From IMG/VR virus record IMGVR_UViG_3300036781_000418, positions 248,001 to 312,000 of that record: a stretch of DNA of 64,000 nt; one strand, given 5' to 3'. The notes under the pieces were generated by a model. The model had not been told where the DNA came from. It made no database searches and saw only the letters and a list, made by a program, of their open reading frames with translations. Position numbers and translations under genes: made by a program. This document shows, one piece after another, positions 6,383 through 56,813 of this stretch (its first letter is position 1; each line of letters opens with the position of its first letter).

Positions 6383-6474
6383 TCCCTTGTACTCTAATGG
6401 TAAGAGACCTGGCTGTTAACCAGACGTAGTCCGTCTAGAACGGTATGGAGGTTCGAGTCCTTCCGAGGGAGCCA
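6383..6474 (+). tRNA. tRNA-Asn(GTT) with long variable arm (92 nt)
   Basis: CTGTTAA loop; extra CCGT-CTAGA-ACGG hairpin in variable region. Confidence 0.75.
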
Positions 6475-6478
6475 ACAT

Positions 6479-6553
6479 GGTGCTGAAGCTGAATGGTTAC
6501 GCAGCGGTCTCATAAGCCGTGTGTCGTGGGTTCGATTCCCACCTGCACCACCA
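6479..6553 (+). tRNA. tRNA-Met/Ile2(CAT), elongator type
   Basis: G1-C72, CTCATAA loop. Confidence 0.85.
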
Positions 6554-6767: not shown

Positions 6768-7226
6768 ATGAACCTCACAAAACTTACCCAACTCAATGAG
6801 TCGACTGACGCTGACCTACTTTCCAAGCTGGACAATGTGTGTAAGCTCTCCATTCAGATGGAGTTGAAGCCGATTAAGTTCGCCAAGAACACCTCCAATG
6901 AGGACAAAGCCGAGGCCACAAAGCTCGCCATTGATCACTACAAGTCACGACTGGACAACTTTTGGTTTGATTCCAGGGCGCTTACGTCAGGCGTAAACGG
7001 CATCAAGGCCTACATGGAAGAATGCTCAAAGCATGGATTTAAGTACGACGCTGCGGCTTGTGAAAAGTTGATCGGAGAGATGACGCATGCGAAGTTAGTT
7101 GGCGACCTTGCTTCAACCATCACCACGCACATTGCCCTTGCCGCCCAAGGCCGTACGAACCGCACTTGGGATTCAGATCAGCAAACTGCGGCGATCCTTC
7201 TGATGAAGGTCGTCGGTATCAAATAA
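6768..7226 (+). CDS. Late protein with internal-protein-like N-terminus; paralog of 9915..10358
   Basis: TAAATA 6741; MNLTKLTQLNE. Confidence 0.75.
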   Translation: MNLTKLTQLNESTDADLLSKLDNVCKLSIQMELKPIKFAKNTSNEDKAEATKLAIDHYKSRLDNFWFDSRALTSGVNGIKAYMEECSKHGFKYDAAACEKLIGEMTHAKLVGDLASTITTHIALAAQGRTNRTWDSDQQTAAILLMKVVGIK

Positions 7227-7231
7227 ACAAA

Positions 7232-7302
7232 CTCACCGCCAAAGGAATGGTCCGAACGCTACGAACGTTTGGCAGGAGGTTCGAGTCCTCTCGGTGGGTC
7301 CA
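7232..7302 (+). tRNA. Atypical tRNA-Arg(ACG), shortened D region
   Basis: CTCACCG/CGGTGGG acceptor, CTACGAA loop, intact T arm, TCCA end. Confidence 0.7.
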
Positions 7303-7310
7303 CCAACAAT

Positions 7311-7385
7311 GGCGTTCGTAGTGTAATGGTAGCACCAGAGACTGTGAATCTTTTAGTGCGGGTTCGAACCCCGTCGATCGCCCCA
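7311..7385 (+). tRNA. tRNA-His(GTG)
   Basis: Encoded G-1:C73 pair, CTGTGAA loop. Confidence 0.9.
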
Positions 7386-7391
7386 ATTAAC

Positions 7392-7465
7392 GCGTTCGTG
7401 GTGTAATGACTGCATAACCGGCCGAAAGCTGGCAGGGCCTGGGTAGAGACCAGGCGAACGCACCA
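7392..7465 (+). pseudogene. Degenerate tRNA-like gene
   Basis: Perfect acceptor and T stems, ACCA end; T loop GTAGAGA; anticodon loop lacks U33. Confidence 0.6.
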
Positions 7466-7537
7466 AAATTGACAACCGCTTTGGTTGACGGTTATCTCAT
7501 TTCCAGAATCCCCCGTCACCTGTTCTTTGTTGTCTAT

Positions 7538-36878: not shown

Positions 36879-37877
36879 ATGCATAAGTTCACCACAATTA
36901 ACCAGCTCCTGAACGAGGCCGCCGGCGGTCGCAAGAAGGACGTTGACTATGAAGATGTCATGGTCAACAAGAAGCAGCCTAAGGGCACTCCAAAGCCGCC
37001 GAAGGGCACGCCCGTCGAGAAGGTGCTGGACCGCGTGGTGGCCAACCTTAAGTCCCACCAGGCCGGCGCGTTCAGCCGCCTGACCGCACGCTACGAGCGC
37101 TTGGACAAGGTCATGAAGAACATGATCAAGGCCCGTGACGACGTCAACGACAAGGTGCGTGGTGAACTTGAGGAGCTGTTCGACGCCGAAGACGAAGTGC
37201 TGACGCGCGTCGTGCAGACCGCCTCTTGGACGATCACGCTGTCTAAGTTCGTGGCTGGCGCCGACAAGCCACCGAAGATTACCAAGGAGTACGAGGACAT
37301 CATCAAGGGGCTCATGGAGCTGATCGATGAGGAACTCGTGCCGAAGGCTGAAGAGATCATCAAGGCGTTCACGAAGGCGCTACCAGCCGATGACACCCCA
37401 ACCAAGCTGACCGTCAAGCCGGTTGGCGATAAGGCCGAGGACCTGTCCGAAGGGCTGCTGAAGCAGGCGAAGATCTGGCTGTCCAACTTCGTCTCCAAGA
37501 TGAAGTCATGGTGCAAGTCCTACGACCGCAAGCTGGCGGACCTGAAAGCTGACTTCGCGGCGATCGAAGAAAAGCCGATCGCCGAAGCGGCTGATTCCGC
37601 TCAAGCCAAGGTGGATGAGTACAACACCAAGAAGCTGGCTGATCAAGACAACTGGAAGGTCACCGACCGCGTCGGTGAAGAAGGTACTTGGAAGCTTGAC
37701 GATCAGATGCTTACTGGAACTATCCTCGCAGTGAGCGAAGATTATCCATATCTCTTCCTTGTTGAAGTTGAGCAGGCAATGAACAAGGTCGGCCGCCGGT
37801 GGGTAGATGAGCCAGTCAAGGGAGATGAAAAGTACTTTGAGCTGGACGAATCACAGTGGGAACATTCCTATCATTAA
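36879..37877 (+). CDS. Late protein with internal-protein-like N-terminus
   Basis: TAAATA 36849; MHKFTTINQLLNE. Confidence 0.75.
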   Translation: MHKFTTINQLLNEAAGGRKKDVDYEDVMVNKKQPKGTPKPPKGTPVEKVLDRVVANLKSHQAGAFSRLTARYERLDKVMKNMIKARDDVNDKVRGELEELFDAEDEVLTRVVQTASWTITLSKFVAGADKPPKITKEYEDIIKGLMELIDEELVPKAEEIIKAFTKALPADDTPTKLTVKPVGDKAEDLSEGLLKQAKIWLSNFVSKMKSWCKSYDRKLADLKADFAAIEEKPIAEAADSAQAKVDEYNTKKLADQDNWKVTDRVGEEGTWKLDDQMLTGTILAVSEDYPYLFLVEVEQAMNKVGRRWVDEPVKGDEKYFELDESQWEHSYH

Positions 37878-37925: not shown

Positions 37926-37996
37926 CTCACCGCCAATGGATTGGTCCGATCCCTCCGAAGGATTGGTGTCGGGTTCGAATCCCGACGGTGGGTCCA
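37926..37996 (+). tRNA. Atypical tRNA-Arg(CCG), shortened D region
   Basis: Same scaffold as 7232..7302; GATCC-CTCCGAA-GGATT; TTCGAAT. Confidence 0.75.
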
Positions 37997-38010: not shown

Positions 38011-38289
38011 ATGGCATTCATTCTTGAACAACTGCAGGCCCTGGCCGAAAAGAAGCGCGGTAAGAAGTGGAGCGCGGACGTTGAGACGAAGTGGGAACCT
38101 GAAGAGGGTTTCTTCGACGGCTCGGCTGGTAAGATCGCCAAGGGTCTCAAGGCCGCGAGCAAGGACCTGAAGCAGGCCATGTCGCGCCTGAACTTCTACG
38201 TCAACCGTGCTGGCAAGAAGCTGGACGACAAAGCCAAGGCCCGTCTGGACATGGCTAAGGAAAAGCTGAGCGCCTTGTATGAAGATTGA
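38011..38289 (+). CDS. DUF3175-like protein
   Basis: KKWSA...QAMSRLNFYVNRAGKKL. Confidence 0.7.
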   Translation: MAFILEQLQALAEKKRGKKWSADVETKWEPEEGFFDGSAGKIAKGLKAASKDLKQAMSRLNFYVNRAGKKLDDKAKARLDMAKEKLSALYED

Positions 38290-43643: not shown

Positions 43644-44309
43644 ATGGCAAAGGTACTCTTCCTTGACAAATCAGGTCAACCACTTGACTGGGGCACGTGG
43701 CGTGACGCCGTGGAGCACTACGCTAAGGACCACGTGCTGTGGGAACTTGGCGACAAGAACCGTGAGTCGATCACGTTCCGTGGCGGGTTCAACTGCAACG
43801 GCGATCAGTCAAAGATCTCGGTCGCACCGATCATCGCCTTGAACGGTGAGGCCACGGGTCGTAAGCGCTACAAGATCCCAACCCTGAACAACCGGTACCT
43901 GTTTGCCCGTGACCGTTGGACCTGCGCGTACTGCGGCTCGACCAACCCCAACGAGTCAAAGCTGTCGTGCGACCACGTCGTGCCGCGTTCCCGTGGTGGC
44001 AAGGACATCTGGGAAAACGTCGTCACCTCCTGCGGTCCATGCAACAACTTCAAGGACAACTGGCTGTTGAGTGAAATTGGGATGGAGCTCAGGTACGTGC
44101 CGTACGTCCCGACACAGGCCGACATCCTGTTCATGGAGTCTCAGGGCATTCTCCCGAGTCAGGCCGAGTACCTGCTGCCGTTCTGCTCCGAGCGTGCTCG
44201 GCTCTCGTTCCAGGGCGTCGCGAACCAAGGTGGTCCCGCGTTGAACCACCTTGAAGAGGCGGCTCGGGCGGCTGGACCTCGTCGTTCGAAGGCACCGACC
44301 CGTAAGTAA
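43644..44309 (+). CDS. HNH endonuclease (McrA-like)
   Basis: RDRWTCAYCG..DHVVPRSRGG..WENVVTSCGPCN. Confidence 0.9.
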   Translation: MAKVLFLDKSGQPLDWGTWRDAVEHYAKDHVLWELGDKNRESITFRGGFNCNGDQSKISVAPIIALNGEATGRKRYKIPTLNNRYLFARDRWTCAYCGSTNPNESKLSCDHVVPRSRGGKDIWENVVTSCGPCNNFKDNWLLSEIGMELRYVPYVPTQADILFMESQGILPSQAEYLLPFCSERARLSFQGVANQGGPALNHLEEAARAAGPRRSKAPTRK

Positions 44310-44393
44310 CCTGGATGGTTCCTCCGTAATGGGACCATCTAGACAACTACGGGTCGTCCAACAACGTACAATGGTCGTAACAACTGGTGCAGC

Positions 44394-44834
44394 ATGATCG
44401 ATTCAAACAAGGTTCTCGGTGCGGCGATGCTTATCTCGCTCGCCCTTCTCACGCTCGTTGACATTACGGGAACGGGTGGTGTGGTGCGGTTGGCGGTCAG
44501 CTTAGTGGTGTTCCCACTGCTCTCGCTGTTCATCACCTGGCTGTTTGGAATTGTGATGGAGGCGGTCGGGCTTGGACACAAGCTAATGCAGCCTCCGGTC
44601 ATGCACGACCTTGAGCCTGAGGTCATCATCGGCGAGTTGGTCGGTCAGTCGACGACGGTGGCTGGTTCGCTCAACGGCGATCCGTTTCCGGAGTGGGTCG
44701 ACATTCTCCAAGCGAAGACGGGTGATACCCTTCGGTACTACTACCACTCCGTGGAGATTCCAAACTACATGTACCCAGTTGGGTACATCGTCATGACCTT
44801 CGGCAAGGCGCACCTCGTCTACGCTGGCACCTGA
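44394..44834 (+). CDS. Membrane protein
   Basis: Two N-terminal TM segments. Confidence 0.65.
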   Translation: MIDSNKVLGAAMLISLALLTLVDITGTGGVVRLAVSLVVFPLLSLFITWLFGIVMEAVGLGHKLMQPPVMHDLEPEVIIGELVGQSTTVAGSLNGDPFPEWVDILQAKTGDTLRYYYHSVEIPNYMYPVGYIVMTFGKAHLVYAGT

Positions 44835-44955
44835 TCCTGGGTATCGTGTGCATGGCTACGCCGCCTGCATACAATAGGCAGACCGGTTAAGCACCGGTTG
44901 ACTACCCAAACCGCGCCCTCACGGGTCCCTTCTTCGTTTGATTCCAAAGTAGTTT

Positions 44956-45396
44956 ATGTCCACACTCATCACGACCATCAAAGTTGACCAACTGGCCGCC
45001 CGCAAGGCCCGCGAGCAAGGTAAGACCGCGCTCCTCACCACGTTGATCGGCGAAGCTGACACGAAGGCGAAGAATGAAGGGACCACCCTGCTGTCTGATG
45101 AGAAGACGCTCAAGCTCGTGACGACGTTCATCTCCAACCTACGTGACAACCTGAAGCTCATCGAGCCAAACTCGATCGCTGGCATTCAGGCGACGCAGGA
45201 GATCGAGATCCTTGAAAAGTACGTGCCCACGCAGCTCACTGAAGATGAGCTTGTGGCGAAGGTCAAGGCCATCCTTGTGGATTCGCCCGAGGTCCCTAAG
45301 ATCGGCGTCCTGATGGGCGCCCTCAAACAACAACTTACCCCAGGCACCTACGACGGAAAGCTCTTGGCCGACGTCGTAAAGCGCCTGATCAGTTAA
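44956..45396 (+). CDS. GatB/YqeY-domain protein
   Basis: QEIEILEKYVPTQLTEDEL; IGVLMGALK; YDGKLL. Confidence 0.85.
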   Translation: MSTLITTIKVDQLAARKAREQGKTALLTTLIGEADTKAKNEGTTLLSDEKTLKLVTTFISNLRDNLKLIEPNSIAGIQATQEIEILEKYVPTQLTEDELVAKVKAILVDSPEVPKIGVLMGALKQQLTPGTYDGKLLADVVKRLIS

Positions 45397-45446
45397 CCCT
45401 TTTTGGTTCGTGGTTGAACCGTTGATATTGCTTATCATCTAAAGCA

Positions 45447-45640
45447 CTGTGAACCCCTGTTCGTCGGATCCAGCCTCAAAGCCGACTATCTGCAAGTAAG
45501 AAGACTTGAACGTGTCTCAGGTAGCTGGGATGTGATTTAGCTGCATATCACTAAAAAGTAGCAGGCCTAACGGGATGCCTATTACTCCGTTGTTCGGTCG
45601 TACCATCGTGTGACCGTCCCTTGCGATGTCGTTTTTCGCT
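45447..45640 (+). ncRNA. Candidate Y RNA(s) upstream of Ro60
   Basis: Multi-hairpin non-coding region directly 5' of TROVE gene. Confidence 0.5.
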
Positions 45641-45690
45641 CAACCACGTTTCCTTTTCTCTCGTTGAAACCCTTTGTTTTGGAGAACCAG

Positions 45691-47322
45691 ATGTCTGCAT
45701 CAACTTACACCGACTTTGCCCAGTCACAGAACCCAGCCAACGCCGTGACCCACCAGACGCAGCCGATCCCAGGCCGCGAAGGTGAGATGGCCAAGAACAA
45801 CGCGGGTGGCTTCACCTTCGCGCTTGACCAGTGGGGCGTGTTCGACCGCTTCCTGTTGATCGGTTCGGAAACCCCAGGCTACTACGTCGGTACCAAGGAG
45901 CAGACCGCTGAAAGCTTCAAGAGCACCATCGCGTGCGTCAAGGCCGACGGCCTCCGTGCGATCAACCGCCTGAAGGAAATCTCGCTCGCTGGTCGCGCAC
46001 CGAAGAACGACCCAGCCGTCGTGGCGCTCGCCTTGGCGGCCATCTACGGTGACGCCACGGTCAAGGCCGCCGCGTACGAAGCCCTGCCACAGGTCGCACG
46101 TACCGGCACCTGGCTGTTCCAGTTCGTCTCCATCGTCGACTCGCTCGGCAAGTGGAACGCGGCGACCAAGCGTGGTGTGGCCAACTGGTACACCAGCAAG
46201 AACCTCGACAAGCTGGCCATCCAGCTCCTGAAGTACCAGTCCCGCAACAACTGGTCGCACCGCGACGTGCTGCGTCTGGCCCACATCAAGCCGACGGAAC
46301 AGAACACCACGTTGTTCAAGTACGTGGTCAAGGGTGCCGACGGTATGGTGCAAGGCGACTTGCTGCCGAACCTCGTCATCGACTTCGAACGCCTGAAGCG
46401 CGCCACCACCAAGGCTGAGGTCTTGGCCGTCGTCAACGGCAACAAGGACGTCACGTGGGAAATGGTGCCGACGGTGTGGCACAAGGACAAGGACGTCATG
46501 CTGGCGTTGCTGCCGAACATGGGCCTGACCGCGATCATCCGCAAGCTTGGTATCCTCACCATGCACGGCGTCATCACGCAAGGCGACGGTCTGAAGCACG
46601 TCACCGACGTGCTGACCAATCCTGAGCAACTGACGCGCTCGCGCATTCACCCGCTCTCGGTGCTCCAGGCCTTCAAGCAGTACAGCCAAGGTCGCGGTGA
46701 AAAGGGCTCCAATACCTGGTCACCGGTCAACGACGTGAAGAACGCCCTTGACATGGCCTTCTACAGCGCGTTCCAGAACGTGCCAGGTACTGGTGGCTCC
46801 GTGTTCCTCGGTGTCGACTGCTCGGGCTCGATGTTCGGTGCTCCTGTCAACGGCTCGCCAAACTTGGTGGCCGCTGAAGTCGCCGCGGTGACCGCCCTGG
46901 CGATCGCCAAGCAGCAGAAGAACTACTTCATCGGTGGCTTCAACACCACGATGGCGCCGATCGGCATCGACCCGGATATGCGCCTTGACAAGGCGTTGGA
47001 GGTGATTCGTCGCTTCCCATGGGGCGGCACGAACTGCGCCCTGCCGATGATCTACGCCGCGCAGAAGAAGATGGAGGTCGACACGTTCGTGACCATCACG
47101 GACAATGAGACCTACGCTGGTTCGATCCAACCGTCTCAGGCCCTGCGCGACTACCGCAAGCAGTTCAAGAAGCCGAAGGCCTCGAACATCGTCATCGGTA
47201 CGTCCGTCAGCAAGTTCACGATCGCGGATCCGAAGGACCCGTACCAACTGGACATCGCCGGTTTCGACTCGGCCGCTCCGGTTCTGATCGCTGAGTTCAT
47301 GAAGGCTTCAGCCGCGACCTGA
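45691..47322 (+). CDS. rsr: Ro60/TROVE-domain RNA-binding protein
   Basis: NNAGGFTF..RFLLIGSE; KYQSRNNWSHRDVLRLAH; VDCSGSM; GGTNCALPM; ITDNET. Confidence 0.93.
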   Translation: MSASTYTDFAQSQNPANAVTHQTQPIPGREGEMAKNNAGGFTFALDQWGVFDRFLLIGSETPGYYVGTKEQTAESFKSTIACVKADGLRAINRLKEISLAGRAPKNDPAVVALALAAIYGDATVKAAAYEALPQVARTGTWLFQFVSIVDSLGKWNAATKRGVANWYTSKNLDKLAIQLLKYQSRNNWSHRDVLRLAHIKPTEQNTTLFKYVVKGADGMVQGDLLPNLVIDFERLKRATTKAEVLAVVNGNKDVTWEMVPTVWHKDKDVMLALLPNMGLTAIIRKLGILTMHGVITQGDGLKHVTDVLTNPEQLTRSRIHPLSVLQAFKQYSQGRGEKGSNTWSPVNDVKNALDMAFYSAFQNVPGTGGSVFLGVDCSGSMFGAPVNGSPNLVAAEVAAVTALAIAKQQKNYFIGGFNTTMAPIGIDPDMRLDKALEVIRRFPWGGTNCALPMIYAAQKKMEVDTFVTITDNETYAGSIQPSQALRDYRKQFKKPKASNIVIGTSVSKFTIADPKDPYQLDIAGFDSAAPVLIAEFMKASAAT

Positions 47323-47395
47323 TCGTCGTACATCCCCAACGCGCACGAGCGCGTATAATGAAAGGACGCTAACCAAGCGTCCTTTTTCGCATCCT

Positions 47396-47527
47396 ATGAC
47401 CATCACCCGACTTCCTCTTGACTCGGCGAACCGCATGATTCGCGTCGGCTTCGGCCTCAACGACGGCCGCTGGTTTGCACGTGTCGACCTGTGGTGGGTC
47501 GGGTTCCGACTGACCGGCAACCGGTGA
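47396..47527 (+). CDS. Small hypothetical protein
   Basis: 43-aa ORF after CGTACA/TATAAT promoter-like motif. Confidence 0.45.
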   Translation: MTITRLPLDSANRMIRVGFGLNDGRWFARVDLWWVGFRLTGNR

Positions 47528-47543
47528 GGCCGAGGGCACACGA

Positions 47544-47774
47544 ATGACGACGACCTTAGAGCTCCACAAGATCAAACGATCGATGCACCACGACGTCGTT
47601 CGGTCCTTCCAGGCAATGCTCAGCGAGTGCGACGTCAAGGCCGTTGACAAGCTTGACCCCGTACTGATGAAGTCCGTCGAAGGTTGGTACAAGCAGTGGA
47701 ACCGTATGACGGGCGACGACGCGCAACCTTCATGGATCCGACCATGTTCTCGAACCTCATCAACGACTCTATGA
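47544..47774 (+). CDS. Hypothetical protein
   Basis: ORF, ATGA-coupled to next gene. Confidence 0.6.
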   Translation: MTTTLELHKIKRSMHHDVVRSFQAMLSECDVKAVDKLDPVLMKSVEGWYKQWNRMTGDDAQPSWIRPCSRTSSTTL

Positions 47775-48490
47775 TCAAAGACCACCTCACCCACACTGAG
47801 AAGCTGAAGCTCTCGGCCAGGTACTGGCTGCTCGGGGCCGCTACGTTCGACAAGCGGTACTACAAGTGCCTTGACGCGTTGGAGATCGCCATCGGCCACC
47901 ATGACGGCGTCCGCAACGACGGCACCGACGAGATCGCCCACATGATCGGCGTCTTCCAACTGCTGCGGACGATGCACAACCACCTGCTTGATCCGGTGAG
48001 CGCGTACATCGAGGCGCTCCTCCATGACTGCATCGAGGATCCGAACCAGCTGACGAAGAAGTTCATCGCCCCGTCCGAGATTCAAGCGCAGTTTGGCAGC
48101 CAGATCCACGACGAGCTGCTGATCATGTCGAAGGAGATCCTCGGCCAGAAGAACCCTCAGTTTCTGCTGAGCAACGTCTTCCTCAACGTGAACACGAGCG
48201 TGGTGAAACCAGGTGACCGTGACAACAACGTCGCGTCGATGTACGGCACGTTCAAGCCCGCTCGCCTGGCACGGTACATCAAGGAGACCAAGGAGGAGTA
48301 CTTCGCCGGTCTCAAGGTTGCGCGTCGCAAGTTCCCTGAGCAGGAGCCCATCTATGAAAACATCAAGCTCTCCCTCACCCACAAGCTCCAGCTTATCGAG
48401 CACCTCGCCAAGAAAGACGAAGAGTCAAGTGCAGCTGGACGGGGAGAGGTTCCTGAAGCTAGCGGCACTAATTCACGCGGGCCTGGGTGA
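47771..48490 (+). CDS. HD-domain hydrolase, RelA/SpoT-hydrolase (Mesh1)-like
   Basis: HDGVRNDG..EIAH; ALLHDCIED; VKPGDRDNN. Confidence 0.8.
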   Translation: MIKDHLTHTEKLKLSARYWLLGAATFDKRYYKCLDALEIAIGHHDGVRNDGTDEIAHMIGVFQLLRTMHNHLLDPVSAYIEALLHDCIEDPNQLTKKFIAPSEIQAQFGSQIHDELLIMSKEILGQKNPQFLLSNVFLNVNTSVVKPGDRDNNVASMYGTFKPARLARYIKETKEEYFAGLKVARRKFPEQEPIYENIKLSLTHKLQLIEHLAKKDEESSAAGRGEVPEASGTNSRGPG

Positions 48491-48601
48491 ACTGGCGGTC
48501 GTAAAGTACTCGATTTCCAAACGTGGTATCGAGCGTAAGAAGATCCTGTCGATCCGTGAACTACGTCGCGTGATCGACGATGAAGCAAGAAAGGCTGAAC
48601 T

Positions 48602-49147
48602 ATGAAGGCGTTGGTTAAGCTCATCGCGGGCGTACGCGACGACGGTGTCATCGGCAACGCGGACCATTCGCTGCCGTTCAAGAGCTCACGTGACATGAAG
48701 CGCTTCAAGGAGCTGACTTCAGGGCACCATGTCATCATGGGTCGCGTGACGTTCGACACGCTCAAGCGGCCAGGTGGACTGCCTAACCGCTACAACTACG
48801 TGGTGTCACGCACGAACTCGTGGTCGGCGATGGCCAGGCTGTGCGGTTCGTTGGATCAAGCGATTCAAGACTGCCACGACAGCAATGAGGTCATCGGCTA
48901 TCCCAAGGACATCTGGATCATCGGTGGTGCGTCGATCTACAAGGAGGCGATTGAGCGCACCTTGGTGGATGAGTACTACCTGACCATCGTCCACCAACCA
49001 GGCGAAGTGCATCCAGCACAGGTGCACTTTCCGGTGTCGTTGGACGTCTTCATGCTGAGTGAAGGCGCTGAGATCGTGCATGAGCCAGCCACGGAGACTG
49101 ACCCTGCACTGACCTTCCTGACCGTCAAGCAACCACGGTCTGCTTGA
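48602..49147 (+). CDS. folA: Dihydrofolate reductase
   Basis: GVIG..LPF..DMKRFKELT..VIMGRVTF..LPNR; IIGGASIY. Confidence 0.92.
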   Translation: MKALVKLIAGVRDDGVIGNADHSLPFKSSRDMKRFKELTSGHHVIMGRVTFDTLKRPGGLPNRYNYVVSRTNSWSAMARLCGSLDQAIQDCHDSNEVIGYPKDIWIIGGASIYKEAIERTLVDEYYLTIVHQPGEVHPAQVHFPVSLDVFMLSEGAEIVHEPATETDPALTFLTVKQPRSA

Positions 49148-49568
49148 CGACGGTTGCTGGTGGAACGCCCGTTGGGAACGGGCTGTCAGACACGACCATC
49201 GTCACGGTCGGCGTGATCATGGAGATGGTCGGCGTGCCAAGCGTGACGGCGTCCGTCGTCCACGTGAAGCTGGACGTAGCGTCCAGCACGCTGATCGGCG
49301 AGAGCAGGACAGTTGACATCGTCACCGTCGAGCTGGCCATCGCGCCCTTAGTCGACACTTCAACCTGCTGCAACAGCCCGCCAGACGCGTTGGCGTTCGG
49401 TCCAAGCGACTCCAAACTGAGCGTGTACAGTTCAGAGGTCTTGTTGGCGCGTGTGTCCTTCACCGTGATGTTGTAGGTCGCCGTCGCCGTCGTCAACGCG
49501 ATGCGCGTCATAAACTTGGCCGCACCCACGGTGTCGGTTGAGAAAACGTAGTTTACGTCGTTAGCCAT
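49125..49568 (-). CDS. Thr/Ser-rich virion-like protein
   Basis: Coupled to upstream fibre gene. Confidence 0.65.
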   Translation of the reverse strand: MANDVNYVFSTDTVGAAKFMTRIALTTATATYNITVKDTRANKTSELYTLSLESLGPNANASGGLLQQVEVSTKGAMASSTVTMSTVLLSPISVLDATSSFTWTTDAVTLGTPTISMITPTVTMVVSDSPFPTGVPPATVVKQTVVA

Positions 49569-51918: not shown

Positions 51919-53889
51919 ATGATGTCTCTGAAAAAACTGGCTGAACAACGCAAGAACCAACTTGGGCAATCCGAGCCGATGACGCTCGAAGCCTACCTCG
52001 AACTGTGCAAGAGCGACCGCATGGCGTTCGCCACGGCGGCCGAGCGGTTCATGGACGCCGTTGGCGAGCCACGCATCGTTGATACTTCCGAAGACCAGCG
52101 CCTCTCGCGCATTCACTCCAACCAGAAGATCCGCGTCTACGACGCCTTCTCCGACTTCTACGGCATGGAAGCCGCGGTCGAACGCGTCGTCGCTTACTTC
52201 CGCCACGCGGCTCAAGGCCTCGAGGAATCGAAGCAGATCCTGTACTTGCTGGGTCCCGTCGGCGGCGGCAAGTCGAGCCTCTCCGAGCGCATCAAGGCGC
52301 TGATGGAGAAGCACGCTATGTACGTGCTGTACGACGAGAACGAGACCAACCCCGAGCTGAAGCTCTCGCCGGTCTTCGAATCGCCGCTGGCCCTCTTCAA
52401 CCCCAACAACCCCGACGACGCCGCCGTCCTGAACGAGTACGGCATTCCGCTGTCCTACGCAGGCCGCTCGCCGCTCTCCGGCTGGGCCCAACAGAAGCTC
52501 GACGAGTTCAAGGCCAACGACCTCGACTTCAGCGCCTTCAAGGTGGTCAAGCTGTACCCCAACAAGGACCGTCAGATCGGCATCATGAAGGTCGAGCCGG
52601 GCGACGAGAACAACCAAGACGTCTCGGTGCTGATCGGCAAGACTGACCTGCGCAAGCTCGAGAAGTTCCCGCAGAACCACCCGTACGCCTACTCCTACAG
52701 CGGCGGCCTGAACCGCACGACGCAAGGCCTGATGGAGTTCGCCGAAATGTTCAAGGCGAACATCAAGACCCTCAACCCCTTGCTGATGGCCACGCAGGAC
52801 CGCTCCTACAAGGGCACTGAAGCGATTCCCGCCCTCCCGTATGGTGGCGTGATCATGGCCCACTCCAACGAGTCCGAGTGGGAAACCTTCCGCAACAACA
52901 AGTCGAACGAGGCTTTCCTCGATCGCGTGTTCATCGTCAACGTGCCGTACTGCCTGCGCTACGACGAAGAGGAACGCATCTACCAGAAGATGCTGAACTC
53001 CTCGGTGCTGCGTGATGTGCGCGTCGCGCCTGGCACGCTGAAGATGCTGTCGCAGTGGTCGGTGCTGACGCGCCTGAAGAGCCCTGAAAACTCGACCATC
53101 GCGGCCAAGCTGGCGGTCTACAACGGCGAGAACGTCAAGGACAAGATGCCCAACGTCAAGTCCCACGAGGAGTACGTCGAGGCCGCTGGTCCGCGCGAAG
53201 GCATGGCCGGCATGTCCACCCGCTTCGCCTTCAAGGTGTTGAGCTCGGTGATCAACTTCCGCCCTGAAGAACTCCAGGCCAACCCCGTTGACCTGATGTT
53301 CGTGCTGACGGAAGCCTTGAAGAAGGAAGGTCTGCCGCCTGAAACCCAACAGGCCTACGAGAACTTCATCAAGGAGATCCTGCAACCGAAGTACTTCGAG
53401 ACCCTCGAGAAGGAACTCCGTGCGGCCTACCTCGACTCGTTCAGCGCCTTCGGCCAGAACCTCTTCGAGCGCTACATCCGCTTCGCCGAAGCGTGGATCG
53501 CCGACGAGCAGTGCAAGGACCCCGAGACCCACCAACTGCTGGACCGTCGGAAGCTCAACGACGAACTGGAAGCGATCGAGAAGGCCAGCGGCATCACGAA
53601 CGCGAAGGACTTCCGCCAGGACATCGTGAACTACGTCCTGCGCTACAAGTCGCGCAGCGAAGGCAAGTCGCCGGCGTGGACCGAGTACGAGAAGATCCGC
53701 CAAGTCCTCGAGAAGCGCATGTTCAGCGCCACTGAGAACATCATGCCCGTGATCTCGTTCGGCCCCAAGCACGACCGCGACCTCGAGGACAAGCACAACG
53801 CGTTCATCCAGCGCATGCTGGACAAGGGCTACTCCGAGCTGCAGATCAAGCAGCTGGTGGCCTGGTGGTCGAACAACAAGCGCACCTAA
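51919..53889 (+). CDS. prkA: PrkA/YeaG AAA+ ATPase/serine kinase
   Basis: KQILYLLGPVGGGKSS; EFAEMFKA; AFLDR. Confidence 0.93.
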   Translation: MMSLKKLAEQRKNQLGQSEPMTLEAYLELCKSDRMAFATAAERFMDAVGEPRIVDTSEDQRLSRIHSNQKIRVYDAFSDFYGMEAAVERVVAYFRHAAQGLEESKQILYLLGPVGGGKSSLSERIKALMEKHAMYVLYDENETNPELKLSPVFESPLALFNPNNPDDAAVLNEYGIPLSYAGRSPLSGWAQQKLDEFKANDLDFSAFKVVKLYPNKDRQIGIMKVEPGDENNQDVSVLIGKTDLRKLEKFPQNHPYAYSYSGGLNRTTQGLMEFAEMFKANIKTLNPLLMATQDRSYKGTEAIPALPYGGVIMAHSNESEWETFRNNKSNEAFLDRVFIVNVPYCLRYDEEERIYQKMLNSSVLRDVRVAPGTLKMLSQWSVLTRLKSPENSTIAAKLAVYNGENVKDKMPNVKSHEEYVEAAGPREGMAGMSTRFAFKVLSSVINFRPEELQANPVDLMFVLTEALKKEGLPPETQQAYENFIKEILQPKYFETLEKELRAAYLDSFSAFGQNLFERYIRFAEAWIADEQCKDPETHQLLDRRKLNDELEAIEKASGITNAKDFRQDIVNYVLRYKSRSEGKSPAWTEYEKIRQVLEKRMFSATENIMPVISFGPKHDRDLEDKHNAFIQRMLDKGYSELQIKQLVAWWSNNKRT

Positions 53890-53973
53890 CCGTGCGTCGG
53901 TTGTAAGTAAGGTAAGGAGGGTGGCCGTGGTGGGCTACCCTCCATTACCCCTCCCCTTGAAAGGCGACCCATC

Positions 53974-55335
53974 ATGACAACGGACATTATGCACAAGTCA
54001 GACATGATCATCGTCGACCGCCGCCGCACGGCGCGCGGAAAGTCGCTCCCCAACCGAGAGCGACTGCTCGACCGGATCCGCGATGCAATTCGCTCGGCGG
54101 ATCCAGAAAACATCGGCACCGGCGGTGTCAAGGCTTCCGGTGCGCCGACTGGCGGCGCTGGTGGTGCCAACAACCCCGTCACCGTGGCCCGTGAGGCCTT
54201 GGCCGAACCAACCTTCCACTACGCCCGCCAATCAGGCAAGCACACCATCGTGCTGATTGGCAACAAGGAGTGGAACCGTGGTGACGACTTCCCGCTTGAA
54301 GGTGAAAGCGACGAAGAAGGTGGTGGCGGTGAAGGCGGCTTCGGTGAAGACGAAGAAGACGACTTCATCGTGAACATCTCGGCCGAGGAGTTCTACAAGG
54401 TCTTCTTCGACGACTGTGAGCTCCCCAACATCCAAGAGTCCACGATGCGCGTGGTGCCGGATGAAGCACCCTCGCACGCTGGCTTCCAGCGCAGCGGCAA
54501 CCCCGCCCAGCTGTCGGTCATCCGCTCCTACAAGAACTCCATGGGTCGCCGCAACGCGCTGACCAAGCCCGCTCGTGAGGAGCTGGCGGAACTGGAAGCC
54601 GAGTTCGAACTTCGTTCGCAGGGCAAGCACCCACAAGGTGAGTACCTCGACGAGGCGGAGAACATCTCGATCATGGCGACCTTGGCCGAACGGATCGAGG
54701 AACTGCGCCGCAAGATCGGCGCCACGCCGTTCTTCGAGGAGCTGGACCTTCGCTTCGTTCACCGTGAACGCCAGCAAGTCAAGAAGGCCGAGGCCGCGTT
54801 CTTCATGCTGATGGACGTGTCCGGTTCGATGGACGAGGAGCGCAAGCGGATCGCCCGCAAGATGTTCACGTTGCAGTACGTGTTCATCAAGCGCACGTAC
54901 CCCGACACGGACATCGTGTTCATCTCCCACACGAACACGCCGCTTGAGGTGACCGAGACGGACTTCTTCACGTCCACCCGCTCCGGTGGTACGTCCATCT
55001 CGCCAGCCTACACGATGGCGCATGACCTCATCAACAAGCGGTACGATCCGAACCTCACCAACATCTACCTGTCGCACGCCAGCGACAGCGACAACTGGGA
55101 CACGGACAACCTGCTGGTGGAGAAGGAGTTGGTGGGTAGTGGCCTGCTGCCGAAGCTGCGCCACATGGTCTACTTTCACTGCGGCTTTGGCTCCAACCAG
55201 TACGGTGCACGGGCCTTCATGGTGCTGCTCAAGGGCATCGCCAACAAGTCCAACAACAAGCTCACCGTGGCTTCGATCGAAGATGAAGGTGCCGTGTTCA
55301 CGGTGTTCAAGGCGGTCTACCGCAAGAAGGGTTAA
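53974..55335 (+). CDS. yeaH: YeaH/YhbH (DUF444) vWA-like protein
   Basis: IVDRR..GKSLPNRER; MDVSGSM; SGGTSIS; SDSDNW. Confidence 0.92.
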   Translation: MTTDIMHKSDMIIVDRRRTARGKSLPNRERLLDRIRDAIRSADPENIGTGGVKASGAPTGGAGGANNPVTVAREALAEPTFHYARQSGKHTIVLIGNKEWNRGDDFPLEGESDEEGGGGEGGFGEDEEDDFIVNISAEEFYKVFFDDCELPNIQESTMRVVPDEAPSHAGFQRSGNPAQLSVIRSYKNSMGRRNALTKPAREELAELEAEFELRSQGKHPQGEYLDEAENISIMATLAERIEELRRKIGATPFFEELDLRFVHRERQQVKKAEAAFFMLMDVSGSMDEERKRIARKMFTLQYVFIKRTYPDTDIVFISHTNTPLEVTETDFFTSTRSGGTSISPAYTMAHDLINKRYDPNLTNIYLSHASDSDNWDTDNLLVEKELVGSGLLPKLRHMVYFHCGFGSNQYGARAFMVLLKGIANKSNNKLTVASIEDEGAVFTVFKAVYRKKG

Positions 55336-55337
55336 CC

Positions 55338-56813
55338 ATGAAACCAATCGACTCCAAAGAGGACTTCTCCGCTCCTCGCATCGTCGAGATCTGGAATGAA
55401 GTGGCGATCATCGCGAAGGATGAGCTGGGCATGGAGGTTGGCAAGAACCTCTACATCAACCAGTTTGAGATCGTGACGGCCGAACAGCTGCTGGACGCGT
55501 ACGCTTCGATTGGACTGCCCGTCAACTACCACCACTGGTCGTTCGGCAAGAAGTTCATCGAAAACGAGCGCTCGTACGCTCAAGGCAAGATGGGGCTGGC
55601 GCTGGAGATGGTGATCAACTCCAACCCCTGCATCAACTACCTGTCCGAGCAGAACACCATGGTCGAGCAGGCCATGGTGATCGCCCACGCCGCGATCGGT
55701 CACAACTTCTGCTTCACCAACAACGTCTACTTCAAGGAGTGGACGTCGGCCTCGAACATCGTGGACTACATGGTCTTTGCTCGTGACTTCATCGGTCGCT
55801 GTGAGGACCAGTACGGGCGCGACGAGGTGGAGAAGGTGATCGACGCGTGCCACTCCATCGGCACCCACTCGATCGACAAGTACCACCGTCGCAACACGAC
55901 CAAGGAGAACGAGGAAGCGCGCCTCGAGAAGATCCTCAAGGAAGACGACCGTCGCCAGCGTGAGCTGGACATCGTGATGCGCAAGACGTCGCTGAACTAC
56001 ATGAAGGACGATCCGGTCGCTGACACCGCCGAGGTGGACCAAGAGGAGAACATCCTCTACTTCATCATGAAGAAGGCGCCCAACACGCCGCAGTGGAAGC
56101 GCGAGATCATGCGCATCTGCTACAAGGTGGAGTCCTACTTCCAGCATCAAGGCCTGACCAAGGTATTGAACGAGGGCATCGCCACCTTCGTCCACTACTA
56201 CATCATGGAGCGGCTCGAGGCCAAGGGCTGCATCACGTCGGACGCGTACATCAAGTTCCTTGATCTGCACGCCTCGGTGATTCGTCAGCCACACTACAAG
56301 CAACGTGGCGGCACACGTTTCAACCCCTACAAGCTCGGCTTCGAGATCCTCATGGACCTCAAGCGCATCTGCACCGAGCCGACGGAGGAAGACAAGCGCT
56401 GGTTCCCCAACATCATCGGCCGCCCATGGTGCGAGGTGGTCAAGGAGGCCGTGACGGAGTACCGTGACGACTCCTTCATCCAGCAGTTCATGTCACCGAA
56501 GCTGATGCGCGACTTCGGGCTGTTCTCCATCGAGATCGACTACGAAGAGTCGGACGACTACGCCAAGGTGCTGGAGATCCAAGACGATCAAGGGTACTCC
56601 AACCTTCGCACGCAGCTCGCCCAAAGCTACGAGCGCATCAACTACGTGCCGGAAATTGCGGTGGTCAAGGCCGACCTCGGCGGCGACCGCACCCTGCACC
56701 TGCGCTACAAGCAGTTCAACGAGCGCACAGTGGACGTGGACGACGCACGTGACGTGATTCGCCACCTGAAGTTCCTCTGGGGCTACCCAGTCTCGTTTGA
56801 AATCCCTGATTGA
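55338..56813 (+). CDS. spoVR: SpoVR/YcgB family protein
   Basis: GLPVNYHHWSFGK; MVINSNPC; NEGIATF; FNPYKLG. Confidence 0.92.
   Translation: MKPIDSKEDFSAPRIVEIWNEVAIIAKDELGMEVGKNLYINQFEIVTAEQLLDAYASIGLPVNYHHWSFGKKFIENERSYAQGKMGLALEMVINSNPCINYLSEQNTMVEQAMVIAHAAIGHNFCFTNNVYFKEWTSASNIVDYMVFARDFIGRCEDQYGRDEVEKVIDACHSIGTHSIDKYHRRNTTKENEEARLEKILKEDDRRQRELDIVMRKTSLNYMKDDPVADTAEVDQEENILYFIMKKAPNTPQWKREIMRICYKVESYFQHQGLTKVLNEGIATFVHYYIMERLEAKGCITSDAYIKFLDLHASVIRQPHYKQRGGTRFNPYKLGFEILMDLKRICTEPTEEDKRWFPNIIGRPWCEVVKEAVTEYRDDSFIQQFMSPKLMRDFGLFSIEIDYEESDDYAKVLEIQDDQGYSNLRTQLAQSYERINYVPEIAVVKADLGGDRTLHLRYKQFNERTVDVDDARDVIRHLKFLWGYPVSFEIPD

What the first reader, a model, noticed from the sequence alone, without database searches (positions are those of the whole stretch)
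7232..7302. Non-canonical tRNA-Arg scaffold conserved in two unlinked copies (ACG here, CCG at 37926..37996)
Seen: both are 71 nt with identical CTCACCG/CGGTGGG acceptor and U73-CCA. Only 15 nt (CCAAWGGAWTGGTCC) separate acceptor and anticodon stem, versus about 19 normally, so the usual U8/9 linker and 4-bp D stem are missing. Anticodon and T stems differ completely yet remain paired. Inference: covariation argues for a functional, D-arm-reduced tRNA class rather than decay, possibly evading host anticodon nucleases or modification enzymes.
Basis: partly seen in the sequence, partly recalled or inferred. Interest (0 to 1): 0.72.

Follow-up and report, generated by a model that had tools for sequence, protein, structure and literature searches.

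The report
Compact non-canonical arginine tRNA genes
Two genes in this soil jumbo phage encode arginine tRNAs with an unusually compact core, a conserved design that also occurs in related phages and bacterial tRNA arrays and that the standard tRNA model misses.

Summary
Windows 7232-7302 (anticodon ACG) and 37926-37996 (CCG) are 71-nt units with an identical acceptor stem, U73 and an encoded CCA. They are the only two places in the 342.6-kb phage genome that fit this architecture; 20 shuffles gave none.

The D arm is not missing. The 15-nt stretch forms a 3-4 bp D stem that directly abuts the acceptor stem. There is no 8/9 linker. A short loop keeps G18-G19-A20. One nucleotide follows, then a 7-bp anticodon stem, a 2-nt variable region and a normal T arm.

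I collected 36 distinct homologues from Ralstonia phage RsoM2USA, IMG/VR jumbo-phage contigs, and tRNA arrays in Kribbella and several MAGs. All carry Arg anticodons. 97.2% of cells pair and 22 of 23 pairs show compensatory changes, including all four D-stem pairs.

Rfam's tRNA model misses all those tested, and the published RsoM2USA tRNA table lacks both of its copies.

The bacterial ArgRS identity set is conserved and the phage has no ArgRS. The two genes would read 91% of the phage's Arg codons.

Best reading: functional, host-charged tRNA-Arg whose compact core resembles tRNAPyl and mt-tRNASer(UCN). Expression, charging and any nuclease-evasion role are untested.

The parts
7232..7302 (+). 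Compact tRNA-Arg(ACG) gene, 71 nt including encoded CCA. It lies inside the phage tRNA cluster, 5 nt after the ORF ending at 7226 and 9 nt before tRNA-His (7312-7385).
   Evidence: (99 bits to R1)
7232..7238 (+). Acceptor stem 5' strand CUCACCG. It pairs with 7292-7298 (CGGUGGG). U73 is at 7299 and CCA at 7300-7302.
   Evidence: acceptor helix 99-100% paired with all 7 pairs covarying
7239..7250 (+). D arm directly abutting the acceptor stem, with no nucleotides 8/9. Stem CCA (7239-7241) pairs with UGG (7248-7250). The loop AAGGAA holds G18, G19 and A20. One linker U is at 7251.
   Evidence: rival hairpin rejected
7252..7272 (+). Anticodon arm: 7-bp stem CCGAACG/CGUUUGG, 7-nt loop CUACGAA, anticodon ACG at 7261-7263. 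It is followed by a 2-nt variable region CA (7273-7274).
7275..7291 (+). T arm: 5-bp stem GGAGG/CCUCU with the canonical loop UUCGAGU.
37926..37996 (+). Compact tRNA-Arg(CCG) gene, 71 nt including encoded CCA. It stands alone between the ORF 36879-37877 and the ORF starting at 38011. No promoter-like or terminator-like site lies nearby.
   Evidence: (100 bits to R1)
37933..37944 (+). D arm of the CCG copy: stem CCAA/UUGG (4 bp) with loop UGGA, abutting the acceptor strand 37926-37932. Linker U at 37945.
37946..37966 (+). Anticodon arm of the CCG copy: 7-bp stem CCGAUCC/GGAUUGG, loop CUCCGAA, anticodon CCG at 37955-37957. Variable region UG at 37967-37968.
37969..37996 (+). T arm UCGGG-UUCGAAU-CCCGA (37969-37985), acceptor 3' strand CGGUGGG (37986-37992), U73 (37993), CCA (37994-37996).

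Best explanation
Both loci are genuine, functional genes for a structurally non-canonical 'compact-core' arginine tRNA.

The fold is a cloverleaf. It has a normal 7-bp acceptor stem plus 5-bp T stem, a normal T loop and a normal 7-nt anticodon loop. The core is rebuilt. No nucleotides lie between the acceptor and D stems. The D stem is 3-4 bp and its loop is only 4-6 nt, keeping G18 and G19 (the partners of the T loop) and A20. One nucleotide follows, then an anticodon stem lengthened to 7 bp and a variable region cut to 2 nt.

Inferred: the two extra anticodon-stem pairs replace the tertiary layers (8-14, 15-48, 26-44) that the missing connector nucleotides normally build. The L-shape and the anticodon-to-elbow distance would then be kept, as in tRNAPyl and mammalian mt-tRNASer(UCN).

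Inferred: the RNAs are cut out of polycistronic transcripts and charged with arginine by the host ArgRS through A20, C35, G36 and C3-G70, since the phage has no ArgRS. A34 of the ACG species would be deaminated by host TadA. Together they would read CGU/CGC/CGA and CGG, which make up 91% of the phage's arginine codons, during infection.

Why this lineage keeps the compact form is not shown. It may be inherited structural drift held in place by compensation, or resistance to enzymes that read the tRNA body.
For: 1. Architecture and chance. The descriptor finds only these two loci in the genome and none in 20 shuffles.

2. Homologues.
- Ralstonia phage RsoM2USA carries Arg(CCG) at 78726-78797(-) with the same acceptor stem and a CCGA-GGGAA-UCGG D arm.
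- It also carries Arg(ACG) at 86156-86228(-) with a wholly different acceptor stem but the same D arm.
- 8 of 30 related IMG/VR jumbo-phage contigs have matches at E<1e-8 (the G016 match proved canonical).
- Pattern scans found more viral members.
- 11 of 120 cellular loci are compact, all in tRNA-dense regions or on short contigs.

3. Covariation on 36 distinct sequences. 97.2% of cells pair, against 33-50% when partners are slid. 22 of 23 pairs show compensatory changes. The D stem is 95.8% paired with all 4 pairs covarying. The anticodon stem is 94% paired over 7 pairs (the 17-sequence set is).

4. Arg identity.
- Every compact member has an Arg anticodon: ACG, CCG, GCG, UCG or CCU.
- GGA in the D loop, U33, C35, A37, G53, C56 and A58 are invariant or nearly so, and C3-G70 occurs in 30 of 36.
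- This matches the bacterial Arg identity set A20, C35, U/G36, C3-G70 and A/G/U73 (PMC9976931).

5. Need.
- The only other Arg tRNA in the genome is a canonical Arg(CCU).
- CGU/CGC/CGA make up 77% of Arg codons and CGG 14%.
- The genome has no ArgRS.

6. Other tRNAs of the same phages are canonical.

7. Gene context. The ACG copy sits 9 nt upstream of tRNA-His inside the tRNA cluster.
Against: There is no direct evidence of transcription, processing, modification or charging. The only RNA runs that matched the region cover the neighbouring canonical tRNA-Ile genes, as conserved parts of other organisms, and give nothing on 7232-7302.

No 3D model could be obtained, because the complex job was not folded. 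The compensation argument therefore rests on analogy.

U73 and C1-G72 are unusual for bacterial tRNA-Arg. The outermost anticodon-stem pair is unpaired in 7 of 36 sequences, so some members have 6 bp. The host of this phage is unknown.

The sequence sets were partly chosen by a pattern and by acceptor and D-stem pairing. This inflates the percentage paired for those two helices, though not the number of pair types.
Confidence: 0.75

Rival explanations
1. The compact body is an adaptation. In this reading it makes phage or array-borne tRNA-Arg a poor substrate for host or competitor enzymes that recognise the tRNA body, such as tRNA-Arg-directed anticodon nucleases of the colicin D type, other defence tRNases, or modification enzymes. 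ArgRS, EF-Tu and the ribosome would still accept it.
For: The class is found in phages and in dense tRNA arrays rather than as ordinary dispersed chromosomal genes. Such arrays have been proposed as anti-defence elements (abstract of PMC12803027). Only Arg tRNAs are rebuilt, while all other tRNAs of the same phages are canonical. The acceptor stem and D arm are identical between the two window copies although their other arms diverged.
Against: Nothing here tests any nuclease. The anticodon loops are standard, so loop-reading nucleases would still cut. Compact and canonical Arg tRNAs coexist in the same genomes: canonical CCU here, UCU in RsoM2USA, ACG and UCG in G010. XacN1, a relative, has no compact copy. 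No Arg-specific defence nuclease is known for the hosts concerned.
Confidence: 0.25
2. They are tRNA-like RNAs with a non-translational role, such as a decoy or sponge for tRNA-binding proteins, a regulator, a primer, or a substrate for an Arg-tRNA-dependent transferase. In this reading they are not used by the ribosome.
For: The unusual core escapes the general tRNA model. The CCG copy is isolated from the tRNA clusters. The window also encodes a Ro-like RNA-binding protein. Some irregular tRNAs in published work are charged but not used in translation (PMC5389517).
Against: The 12-bp acceptor/T branch, 7-nt anticodon loop, U33, A37 and T-loop/D-loop partners are all kept. Five different Arg anticodons occur on the same scaffold. 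The genes sit within tRNA operons. They fill the exact gap in the phage's decoding set. No Y-RNA-like element was found near the Ro gene.
Confidence: 0.1
3. They are decaying pseudogenes of ordinary tRNA-Arg genes that lost a few nucleotides of the D region.
For: Standard tools do not call them. The region 7392-7465 next to the ACG copy holds another aberrant tRNA-like element.
Against: 36 distinct sequences from distant phages and bacteria keep the same lengths and pairings, with compensatory changes in every helix. The identity nucleotides are invariant. The same deletion pattern would have had to arise and persist many times.
Confidence: 0.03
4. It is a normal cloverleaf read in another register. 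ARAGORN at lowered threshold starts the acceptor stem 3 nt later (ACCGCCA), which gives a 2-nt linker and an AGG/UCC D stem.
For: ARAGORN -ps gives this parse for both copies. Default ARAGORN uses shifted registers for the RsoM2USA genes.
Against: That parse needs two mismatches in the acceptor stem and leaves the conserved CUC outside the RNA. Across 36 sequences the 7-bp register used here is 99% paired with all 7 pairs covarying, and slid registers pair 33-50%. The GGA/UCC hairpin pairs in only 57% of cells with no covariation.
Confidence: 0.02

Closest known systems
Canonical bacterial and phage tRNA-Arg (e.g. E. coli tRNA-Arg ACG; the canonical Arg(CCU) of this same phage at genome 237518-237593)
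   Same: Arg anticodons. Anticodon loop CUACGAA or CUCCGAA. The G18-G19-A20 motif, C35, G36, C3-G70, T loop UUCGANU, 7-bp acceptor plus 5-bp T stem, and encoded CCA.
   Different: No nucleotides 8 and 9. The D loop has 4-6 nt instead of 8-9. The anticodon stem has 7 bp instead of 5. The variable region has 2 nt instead of 4-5. C1-G72 and U73 in the window copies. Not detected by RF00005.
tRNAPyl, especially that of Methanomethylophilus alvus (review PMC7609411)
   Same: No nucleotide between the acceptor and D stems, a 4-5 nt D loop, an elongated anticodon stem and a very short variable region. This is a compact core that still gives an L-shape.
   Different: tRNAPyl has a CUA anticodon, is charged by PylRS, and lacks G18-G19 and T-Psi-C. 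Its anticodon stem has 6 bp. The phage tRNAs keep G18-G19 and UUCGA, carry Arg anticodons and Arg identity nucleotides, and have a 7-bp stem. They work alike structurally but are not members of that family.
Mammalian mitochondrial tRNASer(UCN) (review PMC7609411)
   Same: A shortened connector, small D loop, elongated anticodon stem and 3-nt variable region, with G18-G19 and T-Psi-C retained.
   Different: The mitochondrial tRNA has one connector nucleotide and a 6-bp stem, serine identity and an organellar setting. Here there are 0 connector nucleotides, 7 bp, Arg identity, and a phage or bacterial setting with G+C-rich stable stems.
D-arm-lacking mitochondrial tRNAs (ARAGORN's 'D-loop mtRNA' class)
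   Same: ARAGORN's mitochondrial mode is the only standard setting that calls both window genes at their true ends.
   Different: Those tRNAs have no D stem. Here a D stem is present and covaries.
Other irregular phage tRNAs: allo-tRNAs and 8/4 tRNASer or tRNAHis in phage tRNA clusters (PMC5389517)
   Same: Non-canonical cloverleaves carried in phage tRNA gene clusters and missed or mis-called by standard tools.
   Different: Those change the acceptor/T branch (8/4, 9/3) and have long variable arms. Here the 7/5 branch is normal and the D/anticodon branch and connectors are rebuilt.

Membership tests
tRNA (general cloverleaf; Rfam RF00005) | 7-bp acceptor stem plus 5-bp T stem, discriminator and CCA end | tested here: met
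   Acceptor helix 99.2% and T helix 100% paired, with covariation in 11 of 12 pairs.
tRNA (general cloverleaf; Rfam RF00005) | 7-nt anticodon loop with U33 and purine 37; T-loop U54-U55-C56...A58; D-loop G18-G19 | tested here: met
   Invariant or nearly invariant columns in A7: U33, C35, A37, A38, G53, U54, U55, C56, A58, and GG in the D loop.
tRNA (general cloverleaf; Rfam RF00005) | Two connector nucleotides 8-9, 5-bp anticodon stem, 4-5 nt variable region (class I) | tested here: not met
   0-nt connector, 7-bp anticodon stem (6 in some members), 2-3 nt variable region.
tRNA (general cloverleaf; Rfam RF00005) | Score at or above the family's gathering threshold (29 bits) | tested here: not met
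   No RF00005 match at all at E<=10 for either window copy. None at E<=1 for 12 compact genes, while about 70 neighbouring tRNAs score 30-68 bits.
Bacterial tRNA-Arg (substrate of ArgRS) | C35 with G36 or U36 in the anticodon | tested here: met
   ACG and CCG here. ACG, CCG, GCG, UCG and CCU across 36 members.
Bacterial tRNA-Arg (substrate of ArgRS) | A20 in the D loop, the main determinant for E. coli ArgRS (PMC9976931) | tested here: met
   The A directly after GG is conserved in all members. One MAFFT misplacement occurs in G020. Numbering it as A20 is inferred from its position after G18-G19.
Bacterial tRNA-Arg (substrate of ArgRS) | Acceptor determinants C3-G70 and discriminator A/G/U73 (PMC9976931, Table 1) | tested here: met
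   C3-G70 in both window copies and in 30 of 36 members. Discriminator is U here and A, G or U elsewhere.
Bacterial tRNA-Arg (substrate of ArgRS) | Arginylation by ArgRS and use in translation | not testable with these tools
   No ArgRS in the phage. The complex prediction was not folded. No RNA data.
   D stem 95.8% paired, with compensatory changes in all four pairs.
Compact-core tRNAs of the tRNAPyl / mt-tRNASer(UCN) type | 0-1 connector nucleotide, small D loop, anticodon stem of 6 bp or more, variable region of 3 nt or fewer | tested here: met
   definitions from PMC7609411.
Compact-core tRNAs of the tRNAPyl / mt-tRNASer(UCN) type | CUA anticodon and loss of G18-G19 and T-Psi-C (tRNAPyl), or serine UGA anticodon in mitochondria | tested here: not met
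   Arg anticodons, G18-G19 and UUCGA kept, phage or bacterial origin. The resemblance is one of structure, not of family.

The most novel reading that the evidence does not exclude
The compact core is a selected, body-shape-based escape. Mobile elements (jumbo phages and bacterial tRNA arrays across several phyla) would share a rebuilt tRNA-Arg that host ArgRS, EF-Tu and ribosomes accept. Arg-directed tRNases or other tRNA-targeting defence or competition enzymes would not recognise it. This would make it a structural counter-defence, as distinct from the anticodon-loop point mutations described so far.
Probability: 0.2. Interest if true: 0.88.

Novelty: new variant of a known kind. Interest (0 to 1): 0.72.

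Why it matters
Textbook and review statements hold that cytoplasmic elongator tRNAs have two connector nucleotides and a 5-bp anticodon stem. Compact cores are known from mitochondria and from tRNAPyl.

This report describes a well-supported compact-core design for a standard amino acid. It is conserved in at least 36 distinct genes of jumbo phages and of bacterial tRNA arrays from several phyla.

Rfam's tRNA model does not see it. The published tRNAscan-SE table of the cultured phage RsoM2USA lists no Arg(ACG) or Arg(CCG). Phage and array tRNA repertoires, and the codon-usage arguments built on them, are therefore under-counted for arginine.

RsoM2USA and Ralstonia form a culturable pair, so several questions become directly testable:
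- how ArgRS, RNase P, TadA, EF-Tu and the ribosome handle a tRNA without nucleotides 8 and 9;
- whether structural compensation works outside organelles;
- whether body shape protects mobile-element tRNAs from tRNA-targeting defences.

The scaffold may also interest those who engineer orthogonal tRNAs.

Tried and rejected
- blastn of both 71-nt units against 50,697 phage records matched only ordinary tRNA 3' halves, not the D region.
- Exact D-region patterns in IMG/VR gave chance hits in coding DNA (GCCAANGGANTGGTCC: 100 loci, none tRNA-like) or nothing.
- The proteins flanking either copy have no relatives in IMG/VR.
- Three 630-640 kb megaphages sharing the YeaG gene have short Arg tRNAs, but not this architecture.
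- XacN1, a named relative of RsoM2USA, has no compact match.
- The alternative GGA/UCC hairpin was rejected.
- No ArgRS gene was found in the phage.
- RNA evidence: the only RNA runs found cover neighbouring canonical tRNA-Ile genes as relatives' conserved parts, with zero depth on 7150-7529. This is no evidence either way.
- Complex prediction with E. coli ArgRS and the ACG tRNA was not folded, which is no evidence either way. Two Ralstonia ArgRS references were not held.
- Link to a phage RNase P RNA: one related fragment (G026) has an RNase P RNA-like element. G000, RsoM2USA, G004, G020 and XacN1 do not, so there is no general association.
- Link to the Ro-like protein: no Y-RNA-like match at 44000-49500.
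- No promoter-like or terminator-like site was found around the CCG copy.
- Literature searches for a prior description found none. The held library is incomplete, so this does not prove novelty.

Full report
**Setting**

The window is bases 248001-312000 of a 342,591-bp IMG/VR virus record with direct terminal repeats, rated 100% complete. G+C is 57%. The only DNA run that holds it is a soil metagenome.

ARAGORN finds 40 tRNA genes and a tmRNA in the genome, 17 of the tRNA genes in the window. Many proteins are 30-55% identical to those of Ralstonia jumbo phage RsoM2USA (343.8 kb), so the two phages are distant relatives.

**The observation**

Both units are present as described:
- 7232-7302: CUCACCG-CCAAAGGAAUGGUCC-GAACG-CUACGAA-CGUUU-GGCA-GGAGG-UUCGAGU-CCUCU-CGGUGGG-U-CCA
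- 37926-37996: the same acceptor stem, U73 and CCA, with anticodon CCG

Identity between the copies begins at C1 and ends at the A of CCA. The flanks are unrelated.

The copies differ at 16 positions. Two are in the D loop and one is the wobble base of the anticodon. Four form two compensatory anticodon-stem pairs, two lie in the variable region, six form three compensatory T-stem pairs, and one lies in the T loop.

Default ARAGORN and Rfam's tRNA model do not call them. RF00005 gives no match even at E<=10 on a 130-nt stretch. ARAGORN's mitochondrial mode calls exactly these coordinates as Arg(acg) and Arg(ccg), labelled 'D-loop' tRNAs.

I wrote a strict descriptor for the architecture:
- 7/7 acceptor pairs;
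- 0-nt linker;
- fully paired 3-4 bp D stem with a 4-7 nt loop;
- 1 nt;
- at least 6 of 7 anticodon-stem pairs;
- U33;
- 2-3 nt variable region;
- 5/5 T-stem pairs;
- a YUCRA T loop.

It finds only these two loci on both strands of the whole genome, and none in 20 shuffled genomes.

**What the 15 nucleotides do**

Minimum-free-energy folding already suggests a hairpin, CCA(A)/(U)UGG, abutting the acceptor stem. It also suggests that the trailing CC pairs with GG after the anticodon stem. The two window copies cannot test this, because those bases are identical in both. Homologues were therefore needed.

**Homologues**

A covariance model of the two copies (R1) found a 55-bit match in RsoM2USA at 78726-78797(-). 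This is Arg(CCG) with the same acceptor stem, CUCACCG/CGGUGGG, but with the D arm CCGA-GGGAA-UCGG.

With filters off, R1 also found Arg(ACG) at 86156-86228(-). Its acceptor stem is entirely different (ACCGCAU/AUGCGGU), its D arm is the same, and its anticodon stem has 7 bp. All 22 modelled pairs are standard.

A second model (R2) was run over 30 IMG/VR contigs that encode a relative of a conserved AAA-ATPase. Eight contigs had matches at E<1e-8, and seven of these proved compact; the G016 match is canonical.

Two fixed-spacing patterns then recovered further members.
- The T-loop-specific pattern gave 12 viral loci and no cellular locus.
- The general pattern gave 22 compact hits among 123 viral hits. 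It gave 11 compact among 120 cellular loci.

The cellular members are in six Kribbella genomes and in MAGs of Planctomycetia, a delta-proteobacterium and Longimicrobiales, among others. All sit in tRNA-dense regions, up to 17 tRNA genes in 8 kb, or on short contigs. These are the 'tRNA arrays' of the literature. In Kribbella the array borders ordinary metabolic genes.

**Structure test**

I aligned 36 distinct sequences (A7). On this alignment the structure 7 / 0 / 4 / loop / 1 / 7 / loop / 2-3 / 5 / loop has 97.2% of cells paired. With partners slid by 1-3 columns the figure is 33-50%. No shuffle out of 500 reached the observed value.

22 of 23 pairs show compensatory changes. The one invariant pair is G53-C61.
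- D stem: 95.8% paired. All four pairs change on both sides (for example C-G/G-C, C-G/U-A, G-C/A-U/U-A).
- Anticodon stem: 94% paired over seven pairs. The outermost pair is formed in 29 of 36 sequences with six pair types (a 17-sequence version is).

The competing GGA/UCC hairpin pairs in 57% of cells, with no covariation.

One caveat applies. Members were admitted only if at least 6 of 7 acceptor pairs and at least 3 of 4 D-stem pairs formed. Among the raw pattern hits with the compact spacing, however, 18 of 19 distinct viral sequences already had 4 of 4 D-stem pairs.

The D arm is therefore not missing. What is missing is the 8/9 connector, half of the D loop and half of the variable region. 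What is added is two anticodon-stem pairs.

**Identity**

Every sequence with the 0-nt linker has an arginine anticodon. Other tRNAs in the same phages parse canonically with a 2-nt linker.

The conserved positions are:
- GGA in the D loop, read as G18, G19 and A20;
- U33, C35, A37 and A38;
- G53, U54, U55, C56 and A58;
- C3-G70, in 30 of 36 members.

The rest of the acceptor stem varies freely.

The published bacterial arginine identity set is A20 (the main determinant), C35, U/G36, C3-G70, G2-C71 and A/G/U73 (PMC9976931). The phage has no ArgRS (PF00750 search, with controls positive in 14 of 14 genomes). Charging would therefore have to be done by the host enzyme. This step is inferred.

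**Need**

The only other Arg tRNA in the genome is a canonical Arg(CCU). In 349 non-overlapping ORFs, CGU, CGC and CGA together make up 77.2% of Arg codons and CGG 14.3%. The two compact genes are thus the only phage-encoded decoders for 91% of arginine codons.

**How it most likely works**

By analogy with known cases (review PMC7609411), shortened connectors go together with a longer anticodon stem, and the L-shape is kept.
- M. alvus tRNAPyl has no connector nucleotide, a 4-nt D loop, an elongated anticodon stem and a short variable region.
- Mammalian mt-tRNASer(UCN) has one connector nucleotide, a small D loop, a 6-bp stem and a 3-nt variable region, and keeps G18-G19 and T-Psi-C.

Here the two extra pairs would stand in for the layers normally built by U8-A14, 15-48 and 26-44. 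G18-G19 and the T loop would keep the elbow. The intact 12-bp acceptor/T branch would keep RNase P, CCA, EF-Tu and ribosome contacts. These are inferences, since no 3D model could be computed.

The ACG copy lies 9 nt upstream of tRNA-His in the tRNA cluster. The CCG copy lies between two ORFs, with no promoter-like or terminator-like site. This fits excision from longer transcripts.

**Why compact?**

This is not shown.
- the restriction to phages and arrays;
- the fact that only Arg tRNAs are rebuilt;
- the strict conservation of the acceptor stem plus D arm between the two window copies, and of the acceptor stem across distant phages. That stem is shared by the window copies, RsoM2USA CCG, G004 ACG, L404 ACG and even the canonical G004 UCU.

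Several points count against it:
- the anticodon loops are ordinary;
- compact and canonical Arg tRNAs coexist in the same genomes;
- the relative XacN1 lacks the class;
- nothing here tests any enzyme.

I give the adaptive reading about 0.2-0.25.

**Known or new?**

The RsoM2USA paper reports 44 tRNAs from tRNAscan-SE 2.0, '43 canonical'. Its Supplementary Table 6 lists only two Arg(UCU) for the phage, with nothing for CCG or ACG (PMC8504454). Its GenBank record annotates no tRNAs.

Rfam RF00005 missed all 12 compact genes tested at E<=1, while finding about 70 neighbouring tRNAs.

Searches of the held literature found no description of this class. They covered phage tRNAs, tRNA arrays, non-canonical cloverleaves and long anticodon stems. 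The library is incomplete, so an earlier description cannot be excluded.

I rate the class as a new variant of a known kind, namely compact-core tRNA. It is applied here to a standard amino acid in phages and bacteria.

**Verdict**

It is wrong that the D stem is absent, and it is untested as to purpose.

Noticed in passing
window 7392-7465 (+): A further tRNA-like element lies between tRNA-His and tRNA-Ile. It has a 7-bp acceptor stem GCGUUCG/CGAACGC followed by ACCA, and its 5' part resembles the neighbouring tRNA-His. The 'anticodon' hairpin has only a 5-nt loop, and the T loop (GUAGAGA) lacks UUC. It folds well (z = -3.4) but matches no Rfam family.
   Followed up: partly
window 6479-6553 (+): A tRNA-Met(CAU)-like gene is found by Rfam (53.5 bits) and by ARAGORN only at lowered threshold. 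Default ARAGORN misses it.
   Followed up: partly
window 6383-6474 (+): tRNA-Asn(GUU) of 92 nt, which ARAGORN draws with a long extra region of about 21 nt between the anticodon and T arms. That is unusual for an Asn tRNA.
   Followed up: no
window 45610-47322 (+): The ORF of 570 aa matches the Ro-like RNA-binding protein family (phrog_850, E 7e-62). It resembles Ro-like genes of actinobacteriophages at the DNA level. No Y-RNA-like element was detected at 44000-49500.
   Followed up: partly
window 51919-56813 (+): Three adjacent ORFs resemble the YeaG (PrkA-type kinase) / YeaH / SpoVR stress-response trio. The first is 50-54% identical to genes in RsoM2USA, Enterobacter phage LAU1 and three 630-640 kb uncultured megaphages.
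   Followed up: no
own genome, outside the window: G000:C1:198905-200005: A tmRNA gene (tag ANNSVYALAA) is followed by two 77-nt, ordinarily shaped tRNAs with anticodon UCA. ARAGORN labels them SeC, but they lack tRNASec structure and look like possible UGA readers.
   Followed up: no
L175:2753-3017 (= G026:C1:36775-37039), a related phage fragment: A 265-nt match to bacterial RNase P RNA class A (66.9 bits, below the 100-bit cut-off, E about 1e-18 to 1e-21). It lies about 1.2 kb downstream of a compact tRNA-Arg(CCU). It is absent from G000, RsoM2USA, G004, G020 and XacN1.
   Followed up: partly
L203:432-505, L220:5851-5923, L318:3201-3273: Arg tRNAs that carry the same short 13-nt D arm (for example CUGA-CGGAU-UCAG) but keep a 2-nt linker (UC) after the acceptor stem. 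They may be intermediates between canonical and compact forms.
   Followed up: no
L168:1420-1493 (G018, directly upstream of its compact Arg(ACG)): This sequence has a compact Arg-like 5' half (AUCCUUG-CCUAGGGAUUAGG-U-CCCGACC, loop CUGCGAC) but an aberrant 3' half with no recognisable T arm. It may be a decayed or differently built copy.
   Followed up: no
window 7232-7238 / 37926-37932 and relatives: The acceptor stem CUCACCG/CGGUGGG (C1-G72, U2-G71) is shared by Arg tRNAs of distant phages, including a canonical Arg(UCU) in G004. Other helices have diverged. Most class members start with A or C rather than G. This is unexplained.
   Followed up: partly
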